DNA of 64,000 nucleotides from the NCBI RefSeq assembly GCF_001194135.2, contig NC_068988.1, positions 25,489,188-25,553,187 of the forward strand. The letters are read 5' to 3'. Shown piece after piece: positions 1,190-62,773 of this stretch. The position numbers were made by a program, and so were the translations under genes. The stretch's first letter is position 1. Each line of letters opens with the position of its first letter. Below the pieces are notes generated by a model. It did no database searches. It had not been told where the DNA came from and was given only the letters and a program-made list of their open reading frames with translations. The DNA is from Octopus bimaculoides (taxonomy: Eukaryota).

Positions 1190-4100
1190 GTAATTTTGGT
1201 TTTATTGTAAAAATTACTACAACATAAATTCTAGGTCAAGAAGCAATTCCAACATGAGTGTCTTAATTAGGGAATCAGCATTTCATGTTGAAAAGCACAT
1301 TTCAAATGGTGTTCGACGTATGTAACCGTCACGATGTTCTGTGTAAAGTTATACAGGTATGTATGAGATTGTATGCATACATACATACACACGCGCACGC
1401 ATACACACACACACATATACATATATATATATGATAAGAAAGGAAGAATAGTGATGCGAAAGAATGGTGATAGTGAGAATCACAGAAAGATAGAGTGAGA
1501 CTGAAATGATTATAAACGCAACTGTATATCTTCAGTGAGATACGAGTAAGAAAGAAACAATAGTTTAGTTGTAACTTACCTGAGAGTCTGGAAGCTTAGG
1601 TATGCACGTATTGAGAATAAAATATGTCATCTGGCATGACTCAACTCATCCTTATGATTTTAGAACAAATTATCAGCACTTCATAGAATCATTAGAATCA
1701 TATATATATATATNNNNNNNNNNNNNNNNNNNNNNNNNNNNNNNNNNNNNNNNNNNNNNNNNNNNNNNNNNNNNNNNNNNNNNNNNNNNNNNNNNNNNNN
1801 NNNNNNNNNNNNNNNNNNNNNNNNNNNNNNNNNNNNNNNNNNNNNNNNNNNNNNNNNNNNNNNNNNNNNNNNNNNNNNNNNNNNNNNNNNNNNNNNNNNN
1901 NNNNNNNNNNNNNNNNNNNNNNNNNNNNNNNNNNNNNNNNNNNNNNNNNNNNNNNNNNNNNNNNNNNNNNNNNNNNNTATATATATATATATATGCATAT
2001 ATATATAAGTAATACCATACATACATACGCATATGTCATGTATATATATATATATATATATATATTTATACATATTATATTAAATATGCATATATTATTT
2101 ATTTGTATACATATATATGCAAATGTATGTGCATATATATATATATCCGTATATATATATGTACACTCACACACAAACACTCTCACACATATATATAGAT
2201 GAACATATGTACACAATACAGTACGTTAGTATAGTGGAATTAAGCGTGGAAAAGCAGCAGCAACGAAAGAGGTGATGAAAAACTGATAATAGATATTAAA
2301 ATTGTCCATTCGTTCAAAAAGCAGTGCTTGTAATAATCAAGTAGATTTTTTTTTTCAAATATCAAAAATGAATGCGTTGCTTTTAAAATAAATCTTATAT
2401 TGAAAAATGTATAGTCACATGCAAGTAAATATTTAGCGTGGTTTCTTCCAGCTGTTTACCGTGTTCGACATTCGGACTTGCAGTGTCTGTAAAATAGTGT
2501 GCAATTAATACTGGACACGATTGAAATGACTGCTGTTTTGTGCCGACATGCAATGACCTAGAATGTTACAATAAAAGCAAAGTCTCCGTACAAACGTAAG
2601 TCTAATTATTATGGAATTACAATCCACGACCATCACAATGGCATTCACTCACACGTACATACTATTATCTCCCCATAGAAGAATACAAGAATAACGCATT
2701 AGAATCAGACGTATGCATGGTGAAGAGTACAACACTCCAGTTTTAGAAGTTGTCAGTTTTCTCGCTAAAGCACTTTCAGCTTTATATATATATATATATA
2801 TACAGAAAATGCATACATACATGCATACACGTACACACACATGCTATGGAAAATCTTTTTCTCAATATAATTTACGATTATTTCAATTGTAATATATTTA
2901 TAAGTAAATAAAAAAAAAATAGAAGGAAAACAGTTTATCATTTCATTATTAAATTCATTCATAATCCTTCGATCAGATTGAACATCGCATATGCCTAACT
3001 ATCATCATATAACTAATGAACATTAATGCCCTTGAAAAATAAATGAACTTCAAAATGATTTATATAAAGATTGCTCCAGAATACGCCTCGTTTTGCCTAT
3101 TCATAAAATTGCTACTTCATTCAGAAATTAAAATTCCCTCTCTATCAAAATATCACACACAGCAAAAGTTCATTACAACTGTGTACGTGGTGAATGATAT
3201 TCTTTCTCCTCTTGCGTCGGTCTATTCATTGAATTCTATTTCCAAAATAAATCCATATTTCAACTATTGAAATCTAACACGGCAGTTGAATGAACCAATA
3301 TGTTATTATAAAAACAGCCATTTTTAGCAACACAGAATTTGAATGGTTTTGAGATTATCAAGTGCATCTCTTTCTTATTAAAATGTTAGCACCCACCAAT
3401 GTTTCTATCAACGCCAGATGCTGTATTTTGTTTCTGAACAAACAAAAAATATACATTCATATTTGTATATATTAATATTTGTATGTTTGTATGCAACATG
3501 ACTACCTATGTATGTACATATGTTTCTATCTAACGATTTCTCTAACTTCTGACTGTCTGCCTTTCTCAGTCTCTACATATATGAGAAAATATATGTATAT
3601 AAATGCACACACTCGTTTATGTGTGTACGTACATATACACATTCGCATATACATGCGTTCGCACGTGAGTGGGAGAGTAAGAGACAGTATAGAAAGAGTA
3701 ACAGAAAGAAAGAGTAACAGAAAGATAGAGGAAGAGTAAGAGCGAGAGAAAGAGAGAGAGAAAGAGAGAGAGAAAATGCGTGTATTTGTCTGCGTATCTG
3801 AGGAGGACAACGTGTGATGCCTATAATTACGTATTCAGAGGATGAGTATTTGTGTAATTGTTTAGTACACAGAAATTTAGATATTTTTGTCCATCCAGAT
3901 GTTTCAAATATAAATAAGTCGCACTGTTTTGACAATTTGCCAACCATTTAGTTTGGGCGGAGTATTACAAATCATGGAAGCTTTAAGTAATTTTATTTCT
4001 AACGTGGCTTACATCACAGAGCTTATGCTTTCGATCAAATCATACCTTAGTAAATCGAATCGCTCAATAAGTATTCTAGGTTTATTACGCATGTATAATC

Positions 4101-4516
4101 GCAGGTAACACATTCAACAAACTTGGTTTAGCTGTACTCAGTTCACAAGAATATGTCGCTATGAAATACTTCTCTTAACATAACACTTAAGAACATGTTG
4201 CAATGCAAAGATAAGTGAGATTTTTTTTGCATCGCTAAAGCATTTAATTTCAAATTCCGTGAGGGTGAAGTTAGCTTTGTATTATTCCGATGTACTTAAA
4301 ATATGTGTGCGCATGCACTTTGCGCGTATTTCTCTCCCCCTCTCTTTATCTCTCTCTTTCTATCTTTATCTGTCTATCTATCTATCTATCTACCTATCTA
4401 TTCGTGTATATATATTCATTTACCTATGTACACACACACTCACACAGACACACAAAATACACATGTGTGTATATATATATATATATAAAGGTATGAATAT
4501 ATACACATATTACATA

Positions 4517-4574
<58 letters not shown>

Positions 4575-6083
4575 CATACGCACAGACATACATACATTCT
4601 TACATACATTCATTCATACATACATACACAAACACACATTCACCAACGCGCCCACCCACACAGTCAGACTCTCACACACATTTCTACAAATATTTTCGAT
4701 TAAATACGCTATAAAAATTTCCATTCTGCACTTGACTTTATTAGTTACACATGAATGAACACTGAAAAAGTAGAGTTCAAACATCAACGATAATTTCACA
4801 GATATAAGTTCTCTATTTAACAGGTTACTTGAATTTTTGAATATAATCTTTCGTCTATTATTTATTAAACCCAAATAAACCTATACGCTTTGAGAACTCT
4901 AGATAGAAATGTTGATATGTAACTAATGACTGCTAGAGAAAAGTTTGAAATAAATATAGTTTACCACTTTCCGTTTTAACTATCTAATTTATCTTAACGC
5001 GATGAATAGTTATAGACTGCATGCTTAGAATATGCATACCGAATAAATTACTGCAAGAATGTTTCATATAAATAATATTATTGGAACGGCACAAATTATA
5101 TCTTATATTACATCTAAATATGTTATTCCCCATAAATGCTATTTAACTGTCAATTTATCGAAATGACACCATTGAAAACATTGATTTAATTTCTTTTTTT
5201 TTTCCGTTATGTGACACGACAAGCTAATACATATATGGAATGGTCAACATTTTTGCGTACATTCAATGAAAATCGAGTATTAAATATAACATAAAATATG
5301 TTCAAGTTAATAGATGCCGAAGCTTTTTGAATCTTGTATACGACTTTTCACGTTTCCGATCAACACCGAAATTCATCTCATACTGTATAGTTTAAACAGA
5401 GACTATGGTACATGACACATCCACAAGAATAGGATTGAAATGGAGCCATACATAGTTTGACAGGTAGACAGATATGGAGAGAGATACATATATATGTGTT
5501 AGCAGAGTGCATAGATAGATATGTAGGGAGAGGCTTGTATATAACTTATTTTATTGATTCTGTTCACAGGCTTACACAAATTAACAAATTGATGAAATTA
5601 CTGTATCATCGGAAAGAATGCGCTGCATTATTTGTTATTTGATCTGGCCGAACTTTTCCTTTCATTTTCTTGGTGGGGGTGGATGGGAAATAGAGGAGTA
5701 TTGATAATAAATTGCCATTTAATTACTGCAATCGATTCTTCTCTATCTTTTAATTCCCTCTCTTCTTTCTTCCCCACGCTCCCTCTCTCTCTCTCTCTCT
5801 CTCTCTCTGTTTCTCTCTTGGTGTTTCTCCCCCTATCAACGAATTAGATACGTTGTTCTGTGTCAAGTGTCATGGAGTACAGTAATAATTTAATTCACTC
5901 GTCAAATAGAAAAAAAAAAGAAGGACGGGGCTAGCAAGTATATATCATAGAAAATAATATGATATGATTAGTAACCGTGGTATAAGTTTAGGTAAGGGCC
6001 TGTCGACGCAAATTTGGTACACCGATGTACGCTACCTATTACAAAACACTAACACTGTAAGGAATAACCAAAATCAATTATTA

Positions 6084-6468
6084 GGCTGTGGTCATGCTGG
6101 GGCACTACCTTGAAGAATTTTAGTCGAATGAATCGAACCCAGCACTTATTTTTTTTTCTTTTAATCCTGGTATTCTATCGGATTTATGTGGCCGAACCAC
6201 TAAGTTGCAGGAACGTAAACATACCAACACCGGTTCTCAAGAGTTGGGGGTGGAGAGGGGCAAATACAGTGACAAAGACACACACACATATGTGTGTGTG
6301 TGTATGAGTGTGTGTGTCTGACAGGCTTCTTTCAATTTCCGCCTACCAAATTCACTCAGGCTTTAGTTCATCCAAGGCTGTGTTAGAAAACGCCTAAGTT
6401 GCCACGCCAGTGAGACCAAACACTGAACCACGGGGTTGGGAAGTAAGCTTCTTATCACATCATACGCC
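6084..6468 (-). mobile_element. tRNA-derived SINE family B (CORE-like motif, internal CA/TG microsatellite)
   Basis: Homologous to 25710-26098. The tRNA-like head is at the right end, and the plus-strand tail reads gctgtggtcatgctggggcac...gccgaaccactaagttgcaggaacgtaaacatacc. Confidence 0.85.
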
Positions 6469-6599
6469 TATTAACTCTTGTAAAGTGGTTTGATACAAGG
6501 AAATATTTATGAATTACATCGCATTTCGATCTATCTATTTGCTCTTGTTTACTTTTCTACGAAAAAAACGTGAAAGCACAGTTACGCTCTTTGAACGCC

Positions 6600-6649
<50 letters not shown>

Positions 6650-6809
6650 AAAATATTAGTAGTAAAGCAGCAACAACAACAACAGTATTAGTAGTATTAG
6701 TAGTAGTCGTAGTAGTAGCAGCAACAGCAGCAGCAGTAGCAGTCACAGCAGTATCAACCGCAGCAGTAGAAGCTGCAGCAGTCGCAATAGCAGCAGCAGC
6801 AGCAGCGGC

Positions 6810-6877
<68 letters not shown>
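6600..6877. repeat. Compound trinucleotide microsatellite (AGT)n-(AAC/AGC mix)-(AGT)n
   Basis: Read directly; it explains the poly-V/T/L/A ORFs in the track. Confidence 0.97.
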
Positions 6878-7711
6878 CTGATCTTCCCATTTATTTATTT
6901 CCACTCGTAATTCATTGCTCAGTCCAGTGCAGCATATTGACGACATCAAACTGGAATATACACGCTTGCAAAGAGAAATCTTAAAAACACAGCCACGCCT
7001 TCGCCCTTTTAAAGTTAGAATTATCAAAACTGTTCAATATTCGGTTAAAATCTCGATAATATTGATTGTTTCTGAACTCAGTGCGTCATTGATTTTAAAT
7101 TCTTGTTAAATTCTGGTATTAAAACCAATTTACTATCTGGAAATGTATTGGGTATTACGTCCTTCCTAAGATAATTGCGGTTAAGGGCTAATACATCAAA
7201 GTGTTATAGTTTATGTATCATTTTAGAACGTTTAAGATATAAGACTACTGTTTCTCCATCAGATTTGATGCAGATTAACAACATTTTCTCTACATTACAA
7301 ATAGCCCCTTTCTCAGTTCATCCCTATAATTGATGTTGCAATGATGTCAGAAAAATAGATGAGCATAAATTATGGTTTGAAATCGAATTACAACATGTAA
7401 CTATGGACTAAGCTCTAATTGCTGATTCACAGCTAAAATCGTCCCCTAAAGTATATAATTCTTCATTATGTTATACAATATTAAGCCGTATTAAACTGAG
7501 GAAATTTGCAACGTTAAGCCGAAAAGTAAATTACAGGGAAGATTTGGTTTAACCAAATGCACAAACTTTTCTATTAAAATCTAAAGAGCATTCTTAACAT
7601 GAAAGGGTTTCTAGTCGGAGATTTCATCCGTTAATTACCTACATGCATGTTTCAATTAAATCCTTCTAACTCAGGTCAATATATATACTCCTACATTATT
7701 TGTAACTACGA

Positions 7712-7931
7712 GGCGGCAGCTGGCAGAATCGCTATCACGCCGGGCGAAATGCTTAGCGGTATTTCGTCTGTCTTAACGTTCTGAGTTCAAATTCCACCGA
7801 GGTTGACTTTACCATTCATCCTTTCGCGGTCGATAAATTAAGTACCAGTTGCGTATTGGGGTTGATCTAATCAAATGGCCCCCTTCCCCCACCAAATTTC
7901 AGGCCTTGTGCCTATAGTGGAAAGGATTATT
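7712..7931 (+). mobile_element. tRNA-derived SINE family A, full length
   Basis: 5' ggcggcagctggcagaatc (A box), gagttcaaattcc (B box), central gaggttgactttaccattcatcctttcgcggtcgataaattaagtaccag and 3' ggccttgtgcctatagtggaaagg. Homologous to the copies at 26126, 29606, 55662 and 46830. Confidence 0.9.
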
Positions 7932-8499
7932 TGTAGCCACACATTTTGGAGAATAAAGCAGTATGCACCGGTTAAATAATTAAAATGAAAGTATTTACTT
8001 AATTAATAGCCACATGATAAGTTTACTTTTCAGAAAGGATAGCATTCAATTAAAATGGTAATATGTTCGCTGACGGAATGCTTAATTTAATAGTATAAAA
8101 TTGATAACTATATCAAATAAAACAACAAATCTAGTTAAATATAAATAAATAATTTAGCCTATCTAAATTTTAAATGAGACTGTAATTATTATGCAGTGCA
8201 CTTTGAACTTTTGTGTGTATGTGTATATATAATTATATTGATAAAATAACCGAATTGCAATGTTTCCGATGCTTAAGACAAACATTTGTATATGCTAACC
8301 ACACATAAAAATGCACGCATACACGTACACACATACACATAAGAATTTACATGCATATACGTGTGCTTGTGTAAATACGTGCGTATGTCTTACTCTTCCT
8401 TTTTCCTTCTCCCTCTAACTCTCTCTGTATATATGCATACATACTCATAGACATACATAGAAACACAAAAACACACTCTCATATATATAAATCTGAAAC

Positions 8500-8668
8500 T
8501 ATGTTTGTATGCATGCATGTATATGTATATCGACCAATGTACACGCACATGCCTACGCACATGCCTACGCACATGGCTTCCGGACACGACCTTCTGGATG
8601 ATTGGCTTCATTGATAGTGACCTTGGTTGTTCATTGCTTTGAATGAGCCACAAAATAGATTTATACCT
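8500..8668 (+). repeat. Copy 1 of a near-identical inverted repeat pair (169 bp, contains a 12-bp minisatellite)
   Basis: Matches the reverse complement of 14284-14476 except for one substitution in the unique core and two fewer cacatgcctacg-type units. Confidence 0.95.
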
Positions 8669-9995
8669 TTGTTTCCATGAGAGATACAAATCACCACGTA
8701 AGAATATTATAAAAGATTGCTATGAAAAATACTTTAAGATCCAATATGGCGATTTCACACTAGTAGAAAACTAGAGAAAACTAGAATAATAAACAGAAAG
8801 ATTTTAAAATGTTATTCTTTATATTTCTAATATTCTGGCATTCTGAAGTTCAGCAGAAGTGATTTCAGCGAATATGAATGCATAATATTGAACTTTATAA
8901 TTTTCACAAATAGATATATTACCATATCTAGAACATATAATTCCTTCCAAATTCTCGCCGGAGAGACACATTGACTAATGCAAGCAATTATCATATACGT
9001 TTTGGAAGAAGAATGAAATCCGTGTAACCAGAAACAAAGAAACATGAAACTGTTCATAGAGAACCTAATATTTTCCCCTATATGGTATTCATGTTTTGCA
9101 TATTTCACTTTTATACATCGAGTTAATTAAATATAAGTCTTGTTTTAACATTTGGGTTAAACGATAAAAGCGTATGGTAATACATACATAAAAATACATA
9201 TGCATGACCTGCTTTGCTAATGTTATATTAGTCATTACAGAGATATAATAGATAGCGTATTCTCAATGTGCGGAGTAGTGATGAATTATAAACCTATGTG
9301 TATGCACATCTATTTTATACAGTTTATATATGTATGTATATATCTACATGTATTTATATATAAATATATATATGTGTGTGCGTGTGTGTGTGCATGTGTG
9401 TGTGTGTGTGTGTGTATGTGTGTGTGTGTGTGTATGTCTATAGACGTACTCGCAATACACATACAAATACAGATATATACGTATATATTTATACGTACAG
9501 TATAAAATTGCACACATACGCCACATGCATATATTATATATGTATAAATTTATCCCTGACTTGCTGCATACAGATTTGTCTTATGTGGTACATTGTAGTT
9601 TTTCCTTAAATAATACCACGTATTTATCAATTAATCCTAATATTTATCATAACAATAAAAATAATAAAATTAATAAAGCTTGATAGAAGACCCAAGTGAA
9701 TGAAAACATTTTCTAGGAACTCACTTCAAATACGGGAATAGTTTGGCGCCAAGCAAAGAAAAATCGATGTCCTTTGGATTCAGTTGCTGTATTGAGGAAT
9801 TATTGAAGGTCACTTATAGTGCAATAAACCAATCGCTTGACCTGTTATTGAACGTCTGTGTATTGGATACTCTAATTGAGATTCTAGACATGAACCGAAT
9901 TTGAATTTACTCGCTAATATCCTACATTCACAAACAGACAACACACTTAAACAATTTCTAATCCTTTATGCAAACGCATAGGCGTAAAAAACGTA

Positions 9996-10051
<56 letters not shown>

Positions 10052-11097
10052 NNNNNNNNNNNNNNNNNNNNNNNNNNNNNNNNNNNNNNNNNNNNNNNNN
10101 NNNNNNNNNNNNNNNNNNNNNNNNNNNNNNNNNNNNNNNNNNNNNNNNNNNNNNNNNNNNNNNNNNNNNNNNNNNNNNNNNNNNNNNNNNNNNNNNNNNN
10201 NNNNNNNNNNNNNNNNNNNNNNNNNNNNNNNNNNNNNNNNNNNNNNNNNNNNNNNNNNNNNNNNNNNNNNNNNNNNNNNNNNNNNNNNNNNNNNNNNNNN
10301 NNNNNNNNNNNNNNNNNNNNNNNNNNNNNNNNNNNNNNNNNNNNNNNNNNNNNNNNNNNNNNNNNNNNNNNNNNNNNNNNNNNNNNNNNNNNNNNNNNNN
10401 NNNNNNNNNNNNNNNNNNNNNNNNNNNNNNNNNNNNNNNNNNNNNNNNNNNNNNNNNNNNNNNNNNNNNNNNNNNNNNNNNNNNNNNNNNNNNNNNNNNN
10501 NNNNNNNNNNNNNNNNNNNNNNNNNNNNNNNNNNNNNNNNNNNNNNNNNNNNNNNNNNNNNNNNNNNNNNNNNNNNNNNNNNNNNNNNNNNNNNNNNNNN
10601 NNNNNNNNNNNNNNNNNNNNNNNNNNNNNNNNNNNNNNNNNNNNNNNNNNNNNNNNNNNNNNNNNNNNNNNNNNNNNNNNNNNNNNNNNNNNNNNNNNNN
10701 NNNNNNNNNNNNNNNNNNNNNNNNNNNNNNNNNNNNNNNNNNNNNNNNNNNNNNNNNNNNNNNNNNNNNNNNNNNNNNNNNNNNNNNNNNNNNNNNNNNA
10801 TATATATATATATATATATATACACGCATTTCTAAGTTTTCACATATTTGCATTTACATTATTATTGTTGTATTTAACGTTGCTTTTTTAATAGTTTAAT
10901 TACTGCTTCTATATCTCAAATAATTGATATTGCTAAATTTGGCAAATTTGATTACATGTTACAACATACATTTTGTATGTATACATGCGTGTATGGGTAT
11001 ATGCACTACATACATACACATGTATATATGTATATGTATACACGCACACGCACACGCACATATGTAAGTGTGTGTTTGTGCGTGCGCGCGTGTGTGC

Positions 11098-11145
<48 letters not shown>

Positions 11146-13021
11146 GGATTTGGAAACAGCTCGCCTCAGACGCCAGTAAGTTTCTAGAGCCATTAAGTGA
11201 GAATATACACTGTTTCTGGACGTTCTCATATACGGGTGCATACGACGTTCATGTTGTCTCTGTACATGAGTGATTGTGGCTATCTTTAACTTGAGCCCCT
11301 TTATTATCGTTCCTGTCTTCATTCTCTCTATTTTATGTTACTTCGGGCGTGTGCTTTTTTATTAGCTTTTTGTTTGTCTTAAAAATCCGCGTATTTTCAT
11401 TCCATAAGTCTGTCCTCTTGTTGTTGACTAACGCATTTACTTACGTCGTTTAAGTTCTGGTTTCCCACCTTGTGATTATAACCTATAAAACTAATACAGT
11501 GTTTATGCTTGTCTGTTTCAATCGACATCAACTATCTATATTTGCGTAGGAGTGTGTCACAACTCTGTCAGCGCTGTTGCGTTTCAATTTACATTTCAAT
11601 AACTCTATTTACGGTACTTTCTAATAATCAATATCGTTGAACTTGTTATAATTTCAAATTTATTCAGTGTACATTTACGAAGCAAAATTCTGATAAATGT
11701 ATTAATAAAGAGAACGTTAAATTCCACTTTGGAGGCATAAAAATGCAACGAAAAGAAATGTCTGTGCAAAAATATTTGCAAACAAGATTCGAAAATATTT
11801 TATAGAAATGGAATGATTTTAAGCTGAATTTTAAAGCTATATGGAAATATTTTCTGAACGTTAATAATTGACTGATGGAATATTTTTCAGCTCCTTCGAT
11901 TTTAAATTTATTATTGTTTTTAATCCATTTTCTGTGGCGAATACATAATGCGAAATATGTTAAACGAAATATGACAATTCATGACCAGTTTCATTTTTCT
12001 ATGACAGCATTTTAATTTGCTACACCTTGTGAGTCTTCGTTTTCTTTAGCGATTGAGAAATAATTTATTTGTCAAGACATGTTTAAAACATTAAAATAAT
12101 CCAAGCTTAGTGAGTCATACATGATTTGAATTACATATCTCAATCAACTCGTATATTCATTCCATTAAATCATTCTTGTCACAAATAGTTGAAAGAAAAA
12201 AATACATGATGGAGGAAAGACAGATTAAGTACAATGCAAAATAAAATGCCTATCAAATTGCGTTTTCTTCTCTCGCTTTTTTATGTAACATGACGGTGGG
12301 GCAATAAACCAATTAAATTTTGTGTAATGTAGTGGATTCAATTTACTATAAAAATTCTAGTGACTGAACTAAATAGTAATGATGCATATAGATAAATTCA
12401 TTGATTTCGTTTTGAAATTTGTGCAGCATAAACAATAATTCGCAGTATCTATTTTAATATTTCTACTTTCAGCGTTGAAATAGTCTCGGCATTGTCTTAT
12501 TAATCCATAATTCCAGCAATTAATAAGTTAAGTAGGAGTCCCTACGCAAACATTAAATACGTATAAAAGTTATTCTTATGAATGAATTCAGTAATTATAA
12601 AAAATATGCAATAGAAACTTTTTTCCTATACTCTGAGATATAACATGAGTTTTATGCTATTGAAGATTTCGTACACGGTCACCGTATACAAAGTTGTGAT
12701 TTGTTCGATTCCTAGATACAAACTTTGAATTCGGACACCGGCAATATTTCAGACGTACTTATGAATGGATAGACTTAATAAATTTGTGTCATGGATGATA
12801 AATCTTGTAACATATTGAAACGTATATATAAATAAATATATTCTCAGACAAGAGCGACAGAGCGATTAATATTTAACTGTTTACCTGGCCGCAGGTCTTG
12901 TATTGAATATTTTGGGACCCGTAATATAAATCTGAAATACTCTGTTGAAACAAATTGAAATTATTTCCTATTTCATTGAAAAACTACGTACTGAATATTC
13001 TAATATATGTGGAATTCCGTG

Positions 13022-13062
<41 letters not shown>

Positions 13063-14283
13063 NNNNNNNNNNNNNNNNNNNNNNNNNNNNNNNNNNNNNN
13101 NNNNNNNNNNNNNNNNNNNNNNNNNNNNNNNNNNNNNNNNNNNNNNNNNNNNNNNNNNNNNNNNNNNNNNNNNNNNNNNNNNNNNNNNNNNNNNNNNNNN
13201 NNNNNNNNNNNNNNNNNNNNNNNNNNNNNNNNNNNNNNNNNNNNNNNNNNNNNNNNNNNNNNNNNNNNNNNNNNNNNNNNNNNNNNNNNNNNNNNNNNNN
13301 NNNNNNNNNNNNNNNNNNNNNNNNNNNNNNNNNNNNNNNNNNNNNNNNNNNNNNNNNNNNNNNNNNNNNNNNNNNNNNNNNNNNNNNNNNNNNNNNNNNN
13401 NNNNNNNNNNNNNNNNNNNNNNNNNNNNNNNNNNNNNNNNNNNNNNNNNNNNNNNNNNNNNNNNNNNNNNNNNNNNNNNNNNNNNNNNNNNNNNNNNNNN
13501 NNNNNNNNNNNNNNNNNNNNNNNNNNNNNNNNNNNNNNNNNNNNNNNNNNNNNNNNNNNNNNNNNNNNNNNNNNNNNNNNNNNNNNNNNNNNNNNNNNNN
13601 NNNNNNNNNNNNNNNNNNNNNNNNNNNNNNNNNNNNNNNNNNNNNNNNNNNNNNNNNNNNNNNNNNNNNNNNNNNNNNNTATATATATATAAATTTTGTT
13701 CTGAGAATATTTATTTAAGCTTCGATAACGATTTTTCCTATACAAGATTTAAGTGTTAATATAGAAGAAATGCAATATAATTTGTAATAACCATATATCA
13801 AATATAATGTAACATAACATATATGAAGTGATATTTTCAGTAAATAATAATAAATCCTAAATATAAAATTCAACAAAAACAATTTTCGGTGACTGGTTTG
13901 TCAAAATGGTTATTTCGCTCGCCAGTCGTACAGAAAATGATATGCCATGTATATTTCAATAAACATATCATCGTCTCAAAATTTGCAATTAGCCTCTTTA
14001 TGACTAGTAGCGTTTCTCAATATATGAATGTTACACGAATATACATCTATATTTTCTATAGTTCTCAAACGACTTGGAGACAATCATTACAATATAACAG
14101 CAGTTACTTAAACAGGTTTCAGAAAAAATTAGTGGAAGATGTGAATATATGAGTGTATGTGTAAGTTTGATTGTGTGTAGATGCGTCTGTATCTGTGTGT
14201 ACATGTGTGTGTGTATATGTGTGTGTGTGGGCGTGTGATAATATGCCAGTGTAACTGTAGCTATTTAGGCAAGCTTGAAACGC

Positions 14284-14476
14284 AGGTATAAATCTATTCT
14301 GTGGCTCATTCAAAGCAATGAACAACCAAGGTCACTATCAATGAAGCCAATCATCCAGAAGGTCGTGTCCGGAAGCCATGTGCGTAGGCATGTGTGTAGG
14401 CATGTGCGTAGGCATGTGCGTAGGCATGTGCGTGTACATTGGTCGATATACATATACATGCATGCATACAAACATA
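14284..14476 (-). repeat. Copy 2 of the inverted repeat pair (193 bp)
   Basis: aggtataaatctattctgtggctcattcaaagcaatgaacaaccaaggtcactatcaatgaagccaatcatccagaaggtcgtgtccggaagccatgtgcgtagg... is the reverse complement of copy 1. Confidence 0.95.
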
Positions 14477-14534
14477 CTTAAATGTGTGCGTATATGTATG
14501 CATATATACATATAGAAATATACATACATATACA

Positions 14535-14576
<42 letters not shown>

Positions 14577-14683
14577 TACATATATATACATATAAATGTA
14601 TATATATATATGTGTGTATGTATGTATAAATAAATATATATACATATATATGTATATATAAATATCTATATACATACACATAC

Positions 14684-14720
<37 letters not shown>

Positions 14721-14777
14721 TNNNNNNNNNNNNNNNNNNNNNNNNNNNATACACACACATATATACATATATAGTTT

Positions 14778-21105: not shown

Positions 21106-21384
21106 TTCATATGCACTCAACAAAATAGACTTTTAAGAAATAAAAAATCCTAACATCGGGCCACAAGTAACCTTAGATTCCAAGAATCCTCCTAAGTATC
21201 CTAGCTGTCCCTAATAACACTGTTTTCTGGAGCTGTACTAAATTGGCTTTTATGCCCATTTACTCTATCCAATTGTTCAGATCTTTAGAGATAGTTCCCA
21301 ATGCACCTATAACTAGTGGGATACATTGTACCCGAACTTTCCATAGTCTCTGTAACTCAATAACTGGGTCCTGATACTTCGCTA
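21106..21384 (-). mobile_element. R4/Dong-clade non-LTR retrotransposon, 3' end fragment
   Basis: Minus frame reads IAKYQDPVIELQRLWKVRVQCIPLVIGALGTISKDLNNWIE*MGIKANLVQLQKTVLLGTARILRRILGI*, the typical C-terminus of RLE-bearing R4-clade ORFs. It has a 3' UTR of about 65 nt and (TAA)n arrays on both sides. Confidence 0.88.
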
Positions 21385-21464: not shown

Positions 21465-21773
21465 CATTATTATTATCATTTTCATTATCGTTATTACTAT
21501 TATTAATCGCAGAATAGTGATGGGGTGGGCTTGGTTATGCACTAATCACCATATGAAAGCAAACAGCACTAAGATCAACAATATTGAATAAGAATAAATG
21601 AACAATAGGAACAATAAAACGTGTAAATAGCAATGATAGGAAGGGGGCAAACAATACCAATTGCATAATAATATAAAACATTGCAGGGTTGGATAGGATT
21701 TTAATCGACAAAGCCAGCAGTGCTTGTGTTTAGTGCAAATTGCAGAGTCAATTGAATGAAAAAATATCCTCAC

Positions 21774-21974
21774 CGGTGCGATCTACCGTGTTGAGAACGC
21801 ATTTTGGTTCTTCTCCACTCCAGGAAAGATCTCCTTGGCATACTCTCATGAAGACGCCAACTAGATTGTATGAGTCCACACAGGAATACTTGGCTACTGC
21901 ACCGAATTGGTTGAAAGGAAAGATAACTACTTTGCCATTGGAAATTTTGGTGTTTATAGCTTTGCATCTGATAT
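21774..21974 (-). CDS. Internal coding exon encoding one complete Sushi/CCP (SCR) domain of a multi-exon extracellular protein gene
   Basis: On the minus strand: acceptor tttttcttttccatttcag|ATATC, donor ACCG|gtgagg, 201 nt, phase 1-1, no stop. Translation xIRCKAINTKISNGKVVIFPFNQFGAVAKYSCVDSYNLVGVFMRVCQGDLSWSGEEPKCVLNTVDRT has the four CCP cysteines plus NG, FG..A.YSC, Y.LVG...RVC and WSG.EP.C motifs. Phase 1-1 is typical of CCP exons. Confidence 0.93.
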
Positions 21975-22959
21975 CTGAAATGGAAAAGAAAAAGTAGTTT
22001 AAATTTATACTAATAATCTATATAAATGAAATATTAACAGCACAATATAATGGAAAGAACTCTATAGTTTATCATAATAAAGACTATATTGCTTTTAGAG
22101 AGCTACGTTCCTTTTGATATGCTAGGTTGTATATCTTTACAGTGATACTGCAGGGAATATCTCTTCAATTTTATATGAAATGGAATCTAAAACTGTAGTT
22201 TCGTATATATTTGCTCTTCTGGCGTAGAATCAACCTGTTAATAGATCTTGTTCGATTCTGGAGTTGTGTACTATCTCAAGAAAGAAAGTATTTTTACGGC
22301 CTATAAGCAGTTATACAAAATAAATAACAAAATTCTAACTTTTCATCTCTGAGTAACCATTAAGAATCATACAGAGATATGTGCGTTGTAATGACTGCAT
22401 CTAAAGAATATTACTGCGTGTTTTTCTGTATGTATATTAGTAATAGATTTATCAAAGAAGAAAATTGATGTTTTTTTGTACATATATATTTACAAACAAA
22501 TAACTAACACACATAAAAAGCAACAAAATGGAAAAAATCAAGTAACTAACATATTTACTCCAAGAATATATTTGATGTGAGCTCCAATCACTGTATAATC
22601 GGATTTTTAGAGGATGCTTCATTAAGTTACCCACAGGCGAATAGATTATTAAATGTTGATATGAGATACAACTTTTATGTAATACAGTATTTCATATGTA
22701 TATACAATGTCACTCTCACCAAAACTTCATCTCTCCTTCTAAAACAGTGTCTATTACGAATATGTAGGGTTTTTGTTTTTTGTTACATTGAAATACTATA
22801 ATCTCGATTGGATAAGACACTTGGCCGCTTCAGTTAAATATGATGAGTTGTTACCAAAATATATTAAAAATAATATACTGTTGTCATTTCATATAATTCT
22901 CAAATTATTCTGAGATATATGTTTAAGTTAGTTTTTTAAATATATCCGACAGACATAAG

Positions 22960-26125: not shown

Positions 26126-26340
26126 GGGGCCGAGATGGCAGGATTGTAAGCACGCCGGGCGAAATGTTTATCGTGATTTCGTCCGTCTTCACGTTCTGAG
26201 TTCAAACTTCACCGGGGTCGACTTTGCTTTTATCCTTTCGGGTGTCGATAAAAAAAAGTACAAGTTGAGTACTGGGGTCCATGTAATGGACAAGCTCCCT
26301 CCCCAGAATTCAATGGCCTTCTGCCAAAATTTGAAATAAT
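26126..26340 (+). mobile_element. tRNA-derived SINE family A
   Basis: agatggcaggattgtaagcacgccgggcgaaat, gagttcaaac (B box) and ggtcgactttgcttttatcctttcgggtgtcgata align with the 7712 copy. Confidence 0.9.
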
Positions 26341-29028: not shown

Positions 29029-29605
29029 GTTTAAAAATTTCTCTTTTCCTAAAATTTATTTGATAGGAAAGGATAAATCATGTATAGTCTTATGTCTCCT
29101 GGTGGGAGCCATTTTAATTATATTTGATTTTATATGAAATATGCATATATCAAACAAAATATTTTCTCAATCGAAGGTGAGGAAAAGCAATATGTGTTCA
29201 ATATTAATCGATAACATATCCATGATATTTCTCGCAATATCATGCAGTCAATATCCAGACTAACTGGTCGATCCGACTTTTTCTCTTCTCTGAAATTTAT
29301 TGTACTGCCTGAGGAAGAGCCAAGCCTGAAACGTCCTATTTTCACTAATAATTTTCCATATAAAACTTTCATCGAGCGTCAAACTAATACATTCCTTAAA
29401 TATGAAGGGTTATAATCTTTTTGTTATAATGGTAAAATAGTCAGATGTGCTTCTATAGCGTATACTATCGTCAGGCTTCGACAATATCGTTGGATATAAG
29501 ATATGTAAATCTACTGATTCTGAACAGATTAGTTCATGATCAACACAAAGGAGAAGCAGAGTTGCAGAGCAAATAATCTTAATAGCAATATTAATATGAA
29601 TACGA

Positions 29606-29825
29606 AGGCAGCGAGCTGGCAGGATCGTTAGCACGCCTGGCGAAATGCTTAGCGGCATTTTGTCCGTCTGAAGGATCATAGTTGGAATTCCGCCGAGGTT
29701 GATTTTGTTATTCATCTTTTCAGAGGTTGATAATATAAGTACCAGTCGAGCACTGAAATCGATGTAATCGATTTAACCTCAACCACGAAATTGCTGACGC
29801 TATGCCAGAAATTGAAATCAATATT
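29606..29825 (+). mobile_element. tRNA-derived SINE family A
   Basis: aggcagcgagctggcaggatcgttagcacgcc...gccgaggttgattttgttattcatctttt...taagtaccagt, same family. Confidence 0.9.
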
Positions 29826-32622: not shown

Positions 32623-33942
32623 AGCAGTGCAGAGCACTGAAGTGGCTGGACCATAACTACCCAGAACCCTGAGGACAACATTCAAGTGAAAAGAATGATT
32701 GCACATGTAATAAGATCTAGCATAAGAACCACCTTGAAGAACCACATAGTAAAGTTCCACAAAAGATCTATATATGCAGGTTCAAGATGCAGTAATTTGT
32801 GTTGATGTGACTGGAGATGTGTCTGGGCTCTTCATGACCTGGTGGGACAGAAACGTAAACAATCCTTAGCTGAAAATTTACAACTGTTTTGCCTTACTGT
32901 AGGTATGTAGATGACAGTAATATTCTAGTTAGGACACATTCTGTTAACTGTAGTGTAGAAACCGTGAGGAGTATAATGGAGAGCATCCAGCACATAACTA
33001 ACTCCATCCACCAAAGTATCGAGGAAACTATAGATTACCCCGCGAGGCACACTAATAATAAACTCCCTGTCCTTGATATTGAACATTGGTTAGAGACTGA
33101 GAAAAACAGAGTGCAGCTCCTCCACTCCTATTACATAAAACCTATGGCTTCTAAATATGTTGTTCAGAAGAACTCATCTTTGTCACACAACATAAAAATC
33201 AACATATTGATAGCAGATCATAAACAACGTGTCCCCACTATGCGAACCCTGTGAAACTGAGAAATATGTACAGAACTTCATGCACTGCATGTAATTCCCT
33301 GGATATGACCAGATAGATACGCTTCGGGTATAGAGGGGAGCTAGAAAGAAGTCAGATAGCATTATATGTAATGAAACCACTGGTACCTGCCCTAGACAGA
33401 GAAGTAAAGACTATAATAGGATACAGAGAGATTGTGAGAAAACAAACAGAGTGAACACATGTACAAGGGTGACAAATATCAAGGAGTGATGTTTGTAGAG
33501 AACTAGGACGAAGATTTAGGAATGTGCTTGCGGCGGCCAAACTCAAAATTAATATCGTTGAAAAGTTAGGCAAATCTATCAGATCACAGTTGTGTAGGAC
33601 GTACCCCTATGAAAATACCACATGCACCAATGAGGACTGCATGGTATGTAAGATTAACCCTAGCATTAATTTTAGAAATAAAAATGTAGTCTACTGCGTA
33701 AGGGGCATAGAGGGTGCTTGTAAAGGCAAGAAGATGGCATACATTGGTGAGACATCTAGAAGCATTGCAGAGAGACTCAATGTACATTTGAGACAATATA
33801 ACGACAACAAACAGTCATCCGTACTAACATACCAAAGCCCAACATGGAGGCACACTGTGCCGACTTGACATCCGTATTTTATCCAAGCACCCGAAGGACA
33901 TGACACAGATAAATACAGGAGTACATCTTCATAGATGAAACC
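32623..33942 (+). mobile_element. Penelope-like retroelement (PLE), 5'-truncated and frameshifted: RT, Cys-rich linker and GIY-YIG endonuclease
   Basis: Translated pieces: GDVSGLFMTWWDR; YCRYVDDSNILV (RT catalytic YxDD); TIDYPARHTNNKLPVLDI; YYIKPMASKYVVQKNSSL; CTNEDCMVCKINP; VVYCV...YIGETSRSIAERLNVH (GIY-YIG). The Cys-rich linker resembles Neptune-type PLEs (inference). Confidence 0.9.
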
Positions 33943-44292: not shown

Positions 44293-45147
44293 ATCTATTT
44301 CAATCTAGCAAAAATCCAGCAAAGATTCATGAGACGAATACATTTCTGTTTTATGTATAAAGGTTTGAAATATGTGTATTTTCTTGTGCATGTATAATAT
44401 ATGCAATCTCCTTTTATTTTTTGTTCACTTCTATCTGCAATTTTGATAAATCCTTAAGGGTGCAATTGGTACGCGCTTTTCTTTAATTTTTCTCCCAAGA
44501 AAAATAACATACAAATATTAAATAAAAAAGAGGATGTTCAATGTTTTAACTATACAGAAATACAGTTCCTCTCTGCATCCAAAGTTATTTCGAGGAGGTT
44601 TGCACAATTTTTCCTTCTACATTTTATATCATTCGAGTTTTAAGATAATTCATTATTTCAAGATTGTTTTGTCTACTTCATGTAGGGTTTTAACTTCAAA
44701 ATATAATTCCTTTCATCTGACACTATCTACACAAATGGAGACTTTTGTGTCTATTTATGAGGGGTTTTTTTACGATATGACAACAATGGCAAAAAGATTA
44801 GACGCGGAATGCAATCAGAGATATTCTTTGAACTGAAAATTCCAAGTTCATTTCAATACATTTTTCTTTTAAATGGTAGTAACGATTATGTTGTCGTCAT
44901 ATCCACCAAACAAAATCATATCCATTCTTGAGTTAATTGCCAGCACACAAATGCAGGAACAGAGGATGATATGAATGGAGAATTTTTTTCTTCTTTTCTT
45001 TCATAAAGGACCATTTGCCTAATCGGAATAATTAAAGCACGATTCTTTCAAAGACAGCTGATTATCATCATCATCATATCGACATGATGAATATCATAAA
45101 TCACCATATCATCATCGTTGTTAGTAGAATCGTAAAGACCCACCAAC

Positions 45148-46314: not shown

Positions 46315-46825
46315 TCAGTCCTGATAGAGTATCTGTTTTTCAAGTGACTTCCAGTCAGCCTTATAGAAATTTAGGCTGGATAGGGTTTGAGCGCCATCTG
46401 TGCAGAGTTTATCTTTAGTTAATTCCAGGCCATACATTGTCAGTTCTATCATGCTATGGTTTAAGAATATTGTCGGTGATATCTTTAAGTTATGGATAAT
46501 TTTCACATTGTTTGTAAAACAGAGGTCCAGGTTATTTTTGTACCTGGTTGGAGAGAGTATGATCTGCTCCATGAATAGCATTTTCAAAAGATCAAGTAGA
46601 GATTCTGCTTGATTTGGCTCTTTGTACTTCATTCCTGGGGATATGTTCTCCTCAGGCTGTCTGATGTTGGGAAAGTTCAAGTCGCCCATCACCTTTATTG
46701 CACCGAGGCTTTTCTCGAATTTCCCATCATGGTTTGATGCATCAGGTGGGTGATATAATGTGCATCGCACTATATCAAGTTGCTTTACATGTACTATGAG
46801 TGTGTCACACACCGACTTCAATTAC
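46315..46825 (-). mobile_element. CR1/L2-group LINE fragment, apurinic-like endonuclease domain
   Basis: The 168-aa ORF contains LYHPP, MGDLNFPNI, EQIILSPTRYKNNLDLCFTN and FLNHSMI, which correspond to the APE motifs YRPP, GDFN, PTR..N.LDL and SDH. Confidence 0.85.
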
Positions 46826-46829
46826 AATA

Positions 46830-46938
46830 GAAAGGTAAAGTCGACCTCGGAAGAATTTGAAATCAGAAAATAACGGTAGACGAAATACCGTTAAGCATTT
46901 CGCCCAGTGTGCTAATGTTTCTGCCAGCTCGCCGCCTT
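46830..46938 (-). mobile_element. SINE family A, 5' half only, abutting the CR1-type fragment
   Basis: The reverse complement reads aaggcggcgagctggcagaaacattagcacactgggcgaaatgc...gaggtcgactttacctttc and then switches to LINE sequence. Confidence 0.88.
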
Positions 46939-55661: not shown

Positions 55662-55880
55662 AAAGCGGTGAGATGGCAAAACTATTAGCACGCCGGGGAG
55701 AATGCTTAGCGGCATTTCGTCCGTCTTTACGTTCCAATGTTAAATGCTGCTGCGCTCCACTTTACCTTTCATTCCTTTGGCTTGGATAAAATAAGTACCA
55801 GTTGAGAACTGAGTTCGATTTAATCGACTTAGCTCCACCCCGAAATTGCTGGTCTTGTACTAAAAATGTTAACCAATATT
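55662..55880 (+). mobile_element. tRNA-derived SINE family A
   Basis: gcggtgagatggcaaaactattagcacgccgggg...ggcatttcgtccgtctttacgttc...ataagtaccagttgag, same family. Confidence 0.88.
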
Positions 55881-55899: not shown

Positions 55900-56003
55900 C
55901 TTATTAGTGTTGAAGTTTCTACGTACCTTATTAGTGTTGAAGTTTCTACGTACCTTATTAGTGTTGAAGTTTCTACGTACCTTATTAGTGTTGAAGTTTC
56001 TAC
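55900..56003. repeat. Perfect 27-bp tandem repeat, about 3.9 copies
   Basis: Unit cttattagtgttgaagtttctacgtac three times, plus a 23-bp partial unit. Confidence 0.97.
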
Positions 56004-61816: not shown

Positions 61817-62773
61817 CGTTTATGATGATGTATGCAAATCGTCCATGAATTATATGATTAGCTCGTACGTAATAATATAACAGATATGATAAAAAAATTA
61901 TCGACGCATTTGTTCAAAATGTCAGCTATAAAAGTATGTTATTTTGCAATAGTGTTTAGAAAACTCCAGCATTCGTGTGTGTGAGACAGAGTGTGTCTAT
62001 AAGTATGTATGTTTATAGCTACGTATATTGTACTATAAATATTCGCAAGGAGAGTTCCCTTAAAATTTATTTTATGCACTCGTTGCTTAATTCTTAAGAA
62101 GTTTGGGAAAGTAACCACACTAATGTATTATTGGTAGTGAACTCCCCAAAGAATAAATAATACTAGACGCTCAAAAAAAAATTCCTGTAAAAGTGCTAAT
62201 AACATAAAACATAAATGTACATGCATTTTTTTTTTTTTTTTTGCATAATATAAAATCAAATTGAAATAAATACTATTTCTGTGTTAATATCACATAGAAA
62301 TAGATTGAATCAAAATTGCATTTCTACTTACTTTTATTTACACAGCTCATACCACACTGGCCGTCACATAAACATTTTTTCTTCCTGCTTACGCAATCTT
62401 CGTGAGTTTCACATCTCTTCAGGCAAGTTCGGTTTATAACATTCTCCTCTCTTGGACACGAATCTTCACTGGCTATAAAGATGAAAAGAAAAAGAAATAA
62501 CAAAATGAAGAATCAAACAGTTTATTTGTCATTTTGCGAAATACTTTCATATTTCAGTAGTTAAAGAGAGTAATGTTTTCGTCATTCATATATTAGCCTA
62601 AGGTAGTCAAGATAAAAATATTTATTTTAAATTCATNNNNNNNNNNNNNNNNNNNNNNNNNNNNNNNNNNNNNNNNNNNNNNNNNNNNNNNNNNNNNNNN
62701 NNNNNNNNNNATCACGAGTGTTTCAGTGAAAAACAGCAAACACCATGTTAAATTAATCAGTGATGAATGAATA

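What the first reader, a model, noticed from the sequence alone, without database searches (positions are those of the whole stretch)
8500..14476. Near-perfect 169/193-bp inverted repeat pair 5.6 kb apart in presumed intron: candidate long dsRNA stem
Seen: the copies differ by one core substitution and by the copy number of a 12-bp minisatellite (two extra units in copy 2). The repeat is not one of the SINE families in the window. In a minus-strand pre-mRNA the substitution becomes a G-U wobble, so the duplex stays fully paired; in a plus-strand RNA it becomes an A-C mismatch, a context ADARs favour (established). Inference: such identity implies a very recent inverted duplication, gene conversion or a young element family. 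The stem could be an A-to-I editing substrate (editing is extensive in coleoids), drive back-splicing or skipping, or mark an inversion breakpoint pair.
Basis: partly seen in the sequence, partly recalled or inferred. Interest (0 to 1): 0.7.

Follow-up and report, generated by a model that had tools for sequence, protein, structure and literature searches.

The report
Inverted repeat pair in octopus DNA
Two nearly identical copies (179 and 204 bases) of an unclassified repeat face each other about 5.6 kb apart in non-coding Octopus bimaculoides DNA; they could pair into double-stranded RNA if transcribed together, but such pairs are common in this genome and this arrangement depends on an unverified scaffold join.

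Summary
Arm 1 (8497-8675) and the reverse complement of arm 2 (14277-14480) align end to end. They differ by a 24-nt gap (two extra units of a 12-bp minisatellite), one core substitution (A8653/C14299), one mismatch at the outer edge and two near the inner edge. The strand-specific G·U versus A·C reading is correct. The predicted duplex is about -334 to -338 kcal/mol (z = -43).

The caveats are large. The arms lie in different contigs. Arm 2 sits in a 1,042-bp contig bounded by gaps, with (TA)n at both ends, so its orientation and the 5.6-kb spacing rest on scaffolding alone.

The window is Octopus bimaculoides. The pair lies 7-13 kb downstream of a Sushi exon of a WAP-Sushi ("SRPX-like") gene on the minus strand. 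That exon has a good splice donor, so an intronic location is plausible but not shown.

I found no significant target-site duplication, no transposase, no RNA-family or tRNA match, and no third copy in the window. Genome-wide copy number and RNA editing could not be tested here.

Near-perfect neighbouring inverted repeats are already documented as unusually common hyper-editing substrates in this species. Verdict: an ordinary repeat-derived inverted pair of low interest.

The parts
8497..8675 (+). Arm 1 of the inverted repeat (179 nt): a TG/TA-rich outer 46 nt, then the 12-bp minisatellite, then a 100-nt unique core.
   Evidence: Local alignment; blastn; nhmmer.
14277..14480 (-). Arm 2 (204 nt), the reverse complement of arm 1. 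It lies in a 1,042-bp contig (13680-14721).
8543..8575 (+). 12-bp minisatellite ACGCACATGCCT in arm 1, 2.8 copies.
   Evidence: TRF.
14377..14433 (-). The same minisatellite in arm 2, 4.8 copies including one variant unit. The two extra units form a 24-nt bulge in the duplex.
   Evidence: TRF; cofold structures.
8653..8653 (.). The core substitution. A8653 lies opposite C14299: an A·C mismatch in plus-strand RNA and a G·U wobble in minus-strand RNA.
8676..14276 (.). Spacer of 5,601 nt, of which 1,365 are N. It is AT-rich, rich in microsatellites, and has no recognisable coding capacity.
   Evidence: Six-frame Pfam scan found nothing; ORF scan.
10052..10799 (.). Assembly gap 1, with (AC)n on its left edge and (AT)n on its right edge.
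13063..13679 (.). Assembly gap 2, with (AT)n on both edges. It separates the arm-2 contig from the rest of the spacer.
14722..14748 (.). Assembly gap 3, immediately to the right of the arm-2 contig. Its left edge is (AT)n.
21774..21974 (-). Sushi-domain exon of the host gene (phase 1-1; AG acceptor, G|GTGAGG donor). It is 7.3 kb upstream of arm 2 in the direction of transcription.
62332..62472 (-). WAP-domain exon of the same minus-strand gene (phase 1-1; GTAAGT donor).

Best explanation
This is a genuine but ordinary pair of inverted copies of one young, low-copy, non-coding repeat unit of about 180-200 bp. The unit consists of a TG/TA-rich end, a 12-bp minisatellite and a 100-bp unique core.

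The pair lies in intron-like DNA downstream of the Sushi exon of a WAP-Sushi ('SRPX-like') gene of Octopus bimaculoides. The copies arose recently, either as two ends or copies of one mobile element or by a local inverted duplication. They have since differed only by minisatellite slippage and a few substitutions.

The pair has no demonstrated selected function. Its expected consequence is passive. If one transcript runs through both arms (most likely the minus-strand pre-mRNA), they anneal into a dsRNA of about 176 bp with a 24-nt bulge. That is the standard substrate for promiscuous ADAR hyper-editing.

Shown: the sequence anatomy, the duplex stability, the gene neighbourhood, and the absence of coding or RNA-family signals. 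Inferred: intronic location, co-transcription, editing, and the mode of origin.
For: - Discrete repeat with sharp limits and different flanks on both sides of each copy, so there are two true junction pairs and not one locus assembled twice.
- The arms lie 240-1,376 bp from gap edges, and the window holds no other near-identical duplicate. This argues against a systematic assembly artefact.
- Duplex energy is -338 kcal/mol (plus-strand RNA) and -334 kcal/mol (minus-strand RNA), against -84 to -107 kcal/mol for the arms folded separately. A hairpin mini-construct gives z = -43.
- No Pfam domain in any frame of the readable spacer, no Rfam or tRNA match, and no protein homologue of the open frame across the arm.
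- Host gene: the window's Sushi exon is 96-99% identical to XP_014782940.1 of O. bimaculoides. WAP and Sushi pass the Pfam cut-offs. Both exons are phase 1-1 with consensus splice sites, so the gene should continue past 21774 towards the pair.
- Literature: O. bimaculoides shows the strongest hyper-editing signal of 21 species studied. In it, 0.44% of random 50-mers have a >95% identical reverse partner within 2 kb. Hyper-editing is attributed to neighbouring inverted repeats (PMC5625713).
- Molluscs show no dedicated endo-siRNA pathway (PMC12479628), which leaves ADAR as the likely fate of such dsRNA.
Against: - The orientation and position of the 1,042-bp arm-2 contig are unverified, and 24% of the spacer is unread.
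- No exon was found downstream of the pair within the window, and the only annotated model ends upstream of it. The pair could therefore be intergenic and untranscribed.
- The 5.6-kb loop is longer than the ±2 kb used in PMC5625713 to look for an inverted partner. By general knowledge of inverted Alu pairs, pairing and editing fall off with distance.
- Genome copy number is unknown, so 'low-copy' rests only on the absence of a third copy in 64 kb plus a 20-kb locus from a diverged cephalopod.
Confidence: 0.55

Rival explanations
1. The two arms are the terminal inverted repeats of a single non-autonomous DNA transposon of about 5.98 kb (8497-14480). It would be a long-TIR type with subterminal tandem repeats, comparable to MULE, Foldback or hAT-like elements. 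The dsRNA potential would be a by-product.
For: - Only two copies in 64 kb, inverted and close together.
- The outer limits are sharp, while mismatches cluster at the inner ends.
- Subterminal 12-bp tandem repeats differ in copy number between the arms.
- An 8-bp direct repeat, TAAATCTG/TAAATGTG (7/8 match), abuts the ends.
Against: - A 7/8 repeat of this kind is found in 16% of random position pairs, and it needs ends that are 2 nt asymmetric.
- No transposase or any other Pfam domain in the six frames of the readable 4.2 kb.
- The termini match no known superfamily signature that I can recall (own knowledge).
- No other copies were available to define a family.
Confidence: 0.2
2. This is a scaffolding artefact. 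Both copies exist, but the 1,042-bp contig carrying arm 2 is misplaced or flipped. The true arrangement would then be a direct repeat or two distant loci, and no local hairpin exists.
For: - Arm 2 lies in a short contig bounded by gaps on both sides.
- Both contig ends and both neighbouring contig ends are (AT)n or TA-rich, so either orientation fits the sequence equally well.
- This is a gap-rich assembly: 12 gaps in 64 kb.
Against: - The flanks of the two copies differ on both sides, so this is not a collapsed or duplicated allele.
- The repeats are not at contig edges.
- No other duplicated contigs occur in the window.
- Read-pair scaffolding usually orients 1-kb contigs correctly (own knowledge).
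Confidence: 0.15
3. The pair is a selected regulatory RNA structure. An intronic long-range stem would bring splice sites together (exon skipping or back-splicing) or recruit ADAR to tune the WAP-Sushi gene.
For: - Very stable duplex.
- On the gene's sense (minus) strand the core substitution is a G·U wobble, so the stem stays paired there.
- The location is downstream of an exon that has a good donor site.
Against: - No exon lies between or near the arms, so there is nothing to circularise or skip.
- One G·U is not covariation.
- Only the Sushi exon aligns with the diverged cephalopod locus L001; no homologue of the arms is present there.
- Near-identity is what a young neutral duplicate would show.
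Confidence: 0.04
4. The arms are breakpoint repeats of a polymorphic inversion of about 5.6 kb, generated by non-allelic homologous recombination between them.
For: - Inverted orientation.
- 95-nt perfect and about 176-nt near-perfect homology.
Against: - The homology tract is short for efficient recombination (own knowledge).
- The window holds no evidence of either orientation being variable.
- Inversion would be a possible consequence of the pair, not an explanation of its origin.
Confidence: 0.04

Closest known systems
Neighbouring inverted repeats that form long near-perfect dsRNA and are hyper-edited by ADAR (inverted Alu pairs in primates; repeat pairs in O. bimaculoides; PMC5625713)
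   Same: Two oppositely oriented, highly similar non-coding repeats on one stretch of DNA. The predicted duplex is about 176 bp and nearly perfect. The species is the one with the strongest reported hyper-editing.
   Different: Co-transcription and editing are not shown here. The loop of about 5.6 kb is longer than the ±2 kb searched in that study. The repeat belongs to no identified abundant family.
Long-TIR class II transposons (MULE/Mutator-like, Foldback-like and hAT-type non-autonomous elements)
   Same: Terminal inverted repeats of about 180-200 bp that are nearly identical. Subterminal short tandem repeats vary in copy number between the ends. The interior is non-coding.
   Different: No significant target-site duplication, no transposase remnant, no family copies, and no recognisable terminal motif.
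Palindromic Harbinger MITEs of Xenopus tropicalis (PMC5625713)
   Same: A repeat-derived, nearly perfect dsRNA that is a favoured ADAR target.
   Different: Those elements fold on themselves with a short loop inside about 200 bp. Here the arms are separate units kilobases apart.
Hairpin-RNA (hpRNA) endo-siRNA loci of Drosophila
   Same: A long inverted repeat able to give an intramolecular dsRNA.
   Different: Molluscs, including O. bimaculoides, show no evidence of an endo-siRNA pathway (PMC12479628). The loop here is much longer, and no small-RNA data were available.

Membership tests
ADAR hyper-editing substrate formed by neighbouring inverted repeats | Two oppositely oriented, highly similar sequences able to form a long, nearly perfect duplex | tested here: met
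   About 176 bp paired, with a 24-nt bulge and 1-4 mismatches. Energy -334 to -338 kcal/mol, z = -43.
ADAR hyper-editing substrate formed by neighbouring inverted repeats | Both arms lie within one transcript | tested here: inconclusive
   The pair is downstream of a phase 1-1 Sushi exon with a consensus donor on the minus strand. No downstream exon was found in the window, and the RefSeq model ends upstream.
ADAR hyper-editing substrate formed by neighbouring inverted repeats | Clusters of A-to-G mismatches in RNA-seq reads over the arms | not testable with these tools
   No RNA-seq reads or editing-site tables tied to these coordinates were available.
ADAR hyper-editing substrate formed by neighbouring inverted repeats | Partner within about 2 kb (the search range used in PMC5625713) | tested here: not met
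   The arms are 5,601 nt apart in the assembly, of which 1,365 nt is estimated gap.
Class II DNA transposon with terminal inverted repeats | Terminal inverted repeats with sharp outer ends | tested here: met
   Identity begins abruptly at 8497-8500 and 14476-14480. Outside these points, similarity is at the low-complexity background level.
Class II DNA transposon with terminal inverted repeats | Target-site duplication flanking the element | tested here: inconclusive
   The best candidate is 7/8 (TAAATCTG/TAAATGTG) and requires 2-nt asymmetric ends. An equal or better match occurs in 16% of random position pairs. A TA duplication cannot be told apart from an extension of the inverted repeat.
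Class II DNA transposon with terminal inverted repeats | Transposase gene or a remnant of one (autonomous copy), or a shared-TIR autonomous partner | tested here: not met
   No Pfam family in the six frames of the 4.2 kb of readable interior or in its ORFs. A further 1.37 kb of the interior is unread gap.
Class II DNA transposon with terminal inverted repeats | Multiple copies in the genome with the same paired ends | not testable with these tools
   No cephalopod genome DNA collection could be searched. There are no other copies in the window or in L001.
SINE | Pol III-type head derived from tRNA, 5S or 7SL RNA | tested here: not met
   ARAGORN found nothing. Rfam found nothing at gathering thresholds. 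In permissive mode it gave only sub-threshold hits to TG/CA-rich miRNA models.
SINE | Many dispersed copies | tested here: inconclusive
   Only these two copies occur in 64 kb, whereas the window's SINE-like family has five copies. The genome-wide count was not testable.
Assembly duplication (haplotig or gap-edge duplicate) | Homology continues into the flanks, or the duplicate sits at contig ends | tested here: not met
   The flanks are unrelated on both sides. The arms lie 240-1,376 bp from gap edges.
Assembly duplication (haplotig or gap-edge duplicate) | Independent support for contig order and orientation | not testable with these tools
   No reads or alternative assembly were available. 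Both ends of the arm-2 contig are (TA)n, so the sequence is uninformative.

The most novel reading that the evidence does not exclude
The pair marks a recently mobile, so far unclassified long-TIR DNA element of octopus: about 6 kb, with 180-200-bp terminal repeats carrying a variable 12-bp subterminal minisatellite, and possibly an 8-bp target duplication. It would have landed in an intron of a WAP-Sushi gene and there created a new long-range dsRNA. That would link current transposon activity to the exceptional hyper-editing load of this species.
Probability: 0.1. Interest if true: 0.4.

Novelty: new member of a known kind. Interest (0 to 1): 0.15.

Why it matters
If real and transcribed, this is one more of the many repeat-derived dsRNA substrates behind the very high hyper-editing signal in Octopus bimaculoides. 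It could serve as a clean test locus, because it has only two copies, an almost perfect stem, and a built-in A·C versus G·U strand marker. It opens no new question. Its practical value is as a caution: short contigs flanked by (TA)n gaps can create or hide inverted repeats in this assembly, which affects genome-wide counts of dsRNA potential.

Tried and rejected
- Haplotig or duplicate-assembly explanation. Rejected because both flanks of both copies are unrelated.
- Extension of the repeat inward or outward. None found. The inner Smith-Waterman score equals the shuffle mean. The outer score is about the 95th percentile of random windows and reflects low complexity.
- Known RNA gene or SINE head. 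No Rfam hit at gathering thresholds and no tRNA. Permissive Rfam hits were only TG/CA-rich miRNA models scoring 20-29 bits against thresholds of 83-100.
- Coding origin. The 109-codon open frame across arm 1 has no homologue among 5.8 billion proteins.
- Transposase in the spacer. None in the ORFs or in a six-frame scan.
- Target-site duplication. Not significant.
- More copies. None in the window or in L001, even with a profile search. The exact 34-mer is absent from JGI metagenomes and IMG/VR. These are uninformative negatives, because neither collection is expected to hold octopus DNA.
- Orthologous locus. Found in one diverged cephalopod contig (L001, ENA ERZ21867824), but only the Sushi exon aligns, at 76%. 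Conservation of the pair therefore cannot be judged.
- Retrieving the O. bimaculoides locus from another assembly. This failed: neither a window ORF nor XP_014782940.1 is on record in the contig index.
- Downstream exon search, to prove that the pair is intronic. Nothing found.


Full report
**1. What is in the sequence**

A local alignment of 8440-8760 against the reverse complement of 14200-14520 gives one continuous match. Arm 1 is 8497-8675 (179 nt). Arm 2 is 14277-14480 (204 nt; the alignment covers 203 nt).

The arms differ as follows:
- One 24-nt gap.
- A C/G mismatch at 8499.
- A8653 opposite C14299.
- TT/GC at 8669-8670.

The 24-nt gap is two extra units of a 12-bp minisatellite (ACGCACATGCCT). 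Tandem Repeats Finder reports 2.8 copies at 8543-8575 and 4.8 copies at 14377-14433. One of the extra units carries a variant base.

The longest perfect run is 95 nt, at 8558-8652.

The match cannot be chance: blastn E = 1e-60, and a profile of the 100-nt core gives E about 1e-35.

The highest-ranked 'inverted repeats' from the repeat finder (I1-I11) are runs of N matched to runs of N plus (AT)n. They should be ignored.

**2. Gaps and assembly**

The window has 12 gaps, and three of them matter here.
- Arm 1 lies in contig 1978-10051.
- Arm 2 lies in a contig of only 1,042 bp (13680-14721). It sits between gap 13063-13679 and gap 14722-14748.
- A third gap (10052-10799) also lies between the arms.

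So 1,365 of the 5,601 nt that separate the arms are estimated rather than read.

The gap edges are microsatellites:
- Gap 1: (AC)n on the left, (AT)n on the right.
- Gap 2: (AT)n on both sides.
- Gap 3: (AT)n on the left, TA/CA-rich sequence on the right.

The short contig begins and ends in (TA)n, which is its own reverse complement. The sequence therefore fits either orientation equally well. If that contig were flipped, the pair would be a direct repeat and there would be no hairpin. No reading frame crosses any gap, so 'in frame' is not an issue.

Several points argue against a gross artefact:
- The flanks of the two copies are unrelated on both sides, so there are two distinct loci and not one locus assembled twice.
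- The arms are 240-1,376 bp from contig ends.
- The window contains no other near-identical duplicate.

I put the chance that order or orientation is wrong at roughly 15%.

**3. What the repeat is not**

- It has no third copy, even a degenerate one, in the 64-kb window or in a 20-kb locus from a related cephalopod.
- It is unrelated to the window's SINE-like family, which has five copies at about 80% identity.
- It matches no Rfam family at gathering thresholds and no tRNA. In permissive mode only TG/CA-rich miRNA models score, far below their thresholds.
- The open frame that runs through arm 1 (109 codons) has no protein homologue.
- The readable 4.2 kb of the spacer has no Pfam domain, either in its ORFs or in all six frames with stops masked. 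No transposase is visible.
- The best candidate target-site duplication is an 8-mer with one mismatch (TAAATCTG/TAAATGTG). It requires ends that are 2 nt asymmetric, and an equally good match turns up in 16% of random position pairs.
- A TA duplication would be indistinguishable from two more bases of inverted repeat.
- Similarity does not continue inward beyond 8675/14277 (score equal to the shuffle mean). It does not continue outward beyond low-complexity background.

**4. Where it is**

Two minus-strand open frames looked like exons. Queried together, they hit XP_014782940.1, 'sushi repeat-containing protein SRPX-like' of Octopus bimaculoides, at 96% identity. tblastn of that protein maps residues 7-81 to 21751-21975 at 98.7%.

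Pfam confirms a WAP domain (23.5 bits, cut-off 20.8) and a Sushi domain (39.2 bits).

Reading the DNA:
- The WAP exon is 62332-62472, with a GTAAGT donor.
- The Sushi exon is 21774-21974, with a G|GTGAGG donor.
- Both are symmetric phase 1-1 exons with AG acceptors.

The 81-residue RefSeq model starts at an internal methionine of the WAP exon. It ends by reading through the Sushi donor into a stop, so it looks truncated at both ends. The gene very probably continues towards lower coordinates, which is towards the repeat pair.

I found no further exon in 1-21.7 kb by any of three routes:
- tblastn with Sushi proteins.
- tblastx against the cephalopod locus L001.
- A Pfam scan of ORFs of 50 residues or more.

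The pair is therefore either inside an intron longer than 21 kb that leaves the window, or in 3' flanking DNA. 'Presumed intron' is plausible (I estimate 60-70%) but not shown.

L001 (ENA ERZ21867824, contig ctg123284l) shares only the Sushi exon, at 76% nucleotide identity. It has no counterpart of the arms and is too diverged to bear on conservation.

**5. Would it pair?**

Co-folding the two arms gives -338 kcal/mol for plus-strand RNA and -334 kcal/mol for minus-strand RNA. The arms folded on their own total -84 to -107 kcal/mol.

A hairpin mini-construct of the minus-strand arms folds at -333 kcal/mol, against -100 ± 5 for shuffles, giving z = -43.

The extra minisatellite units loop out as a 24-nt bulge.

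The minus strand is the sense strand of the gene.

A 5.6-kb loop is long. From general knowledge of inverted Alu pairs, pairing and editing efficiency fall with distance.

**6. Comparison with what is known**

Porath et al. (PMC5625713) screened 21 species for hyper-editing.
- O. bimaculoides had the strongest signal, with about 1.05 million unique hyper-edited sites in one CNS data set.
- It also had the highest genomic potential for long near-perfect dsRNA. Of random 50-mers, 0.44% have a >95% identical reverse-oriented partner within 2 kb.
- The authors attribute hyper-editing to neighbouring inverted repeats.

The window itself holds a second, older inverted pair (44765-44878 / 49483-49596; 88.7% identity; 4.6 kb apart).

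The alternative fate of such dsRNA, Dicer processing into endo-siRNAs, is unlikely. A survey that included O. bimaculoides found no evidence of an endo-siRNA pathway in molluscs (PMC12479628).

**7. Origin**

The anatomy resembles the ends of long-TIR DNA transposons in four ways:
- Only two copies, which are close together and inverted.
- Sharp outer ends.
- Mismatches concentrated at the inner ends.
- A subterminal tandem repeat whose copy number differs between the arms.

However, the defining tests fail or are inconclusive. There is no significant target-site duplication, no transposase and no family.

Two neighbouring insertions of a young dispersed repeat, or a local inverted duplication, fit equally well. 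Deciding among these needs a genome-wide copy count, which these tools cannot provide because no cephalopod genomic DNA collection is available.

**8. Verdict**

Everything functional is untested: editing, back-splicing and inversion. No exon lies between the arms that could be circularised or skipped.

The finding is best filed as an ordinary, young, repeat-derived inverted pair. It is a new example of a known and locally common kind, and it carries a real caveat about scaffolding. Interest is 0.15.

Noticed in passing
window 21774-21974 (-) and 62332-62472 (-): The RefSeq model XP_014782940.1 (81 aa, 'SRPX-like') looks truncated. It starts at an internal Met of a WAP-domain exon and ends by reading through the consensus donor of the Sushi exon. 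Both are phase 1-1 exons about 40.3 kb apart, so the real gene is a larger WAP-Sushi protein with exons outside the model.
   Followed up: partly
window 44765-44878 and 49483-49596: A second inverted repeat pair: 88.7% identity over 115 nt, about 4.6 kb apart. It is older than the pair under study and its family is unidentified.
   Followed up: no
window 7707-7862, 26132-26298, 29601-29746, 46830-46937, 55670-55836: A SINE-like dispersed repeat of about 145-170 nt, with five copies at 75-82% identity (one inverted). It is unrelated to the arms of the finding.
   Followed up: no
window 32874-33865 (+) and 46318-46821 (-): Decayed retroelement fragments. One ORF has a weak GIY-YIG nuclease match (Penelope-like). 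Another has a weak endonuclease/reverse-transcriptase (Exo_endo_phos_2) match. Both are below the Pfam cut-offs.
   Followed up: partly
window 55900-56003: A perfect tandem duplication of a 54-nt unit (100% over 50 nt). It lies inside an ORF with the repeated motif NFNTNKVRR.
   Followed up: no
window 21164-21379; L001 2868-3056, 3434-3631, 8430-8645: A translated-level repeat (41-46% identity in tblastx) shared between the octopus window and three places in the diverged cephalopod contig. It is probably an old transposable-element family common to both species.
   Followed up: no
window 10178-10822 / 13035-13679 and 13025-13717: The longest 'inverted repeats' reported by the repeat finder are assembly-gap Ns matched to Ns, plus (AT)n edges. 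They are tool artefacts, not sequence features.
   Followed up: yes
L001 (ENA ERZ21867824, contig ctg123284l, 713 kb): A record filed as a metagenome assembly carries a large contig with a cephalopod orthologue of the Sushi exon (76% nt identity, 71% aa identity). The assembly therefore apparently contains host (cephalopod) genome sequence.
   Followed up: no
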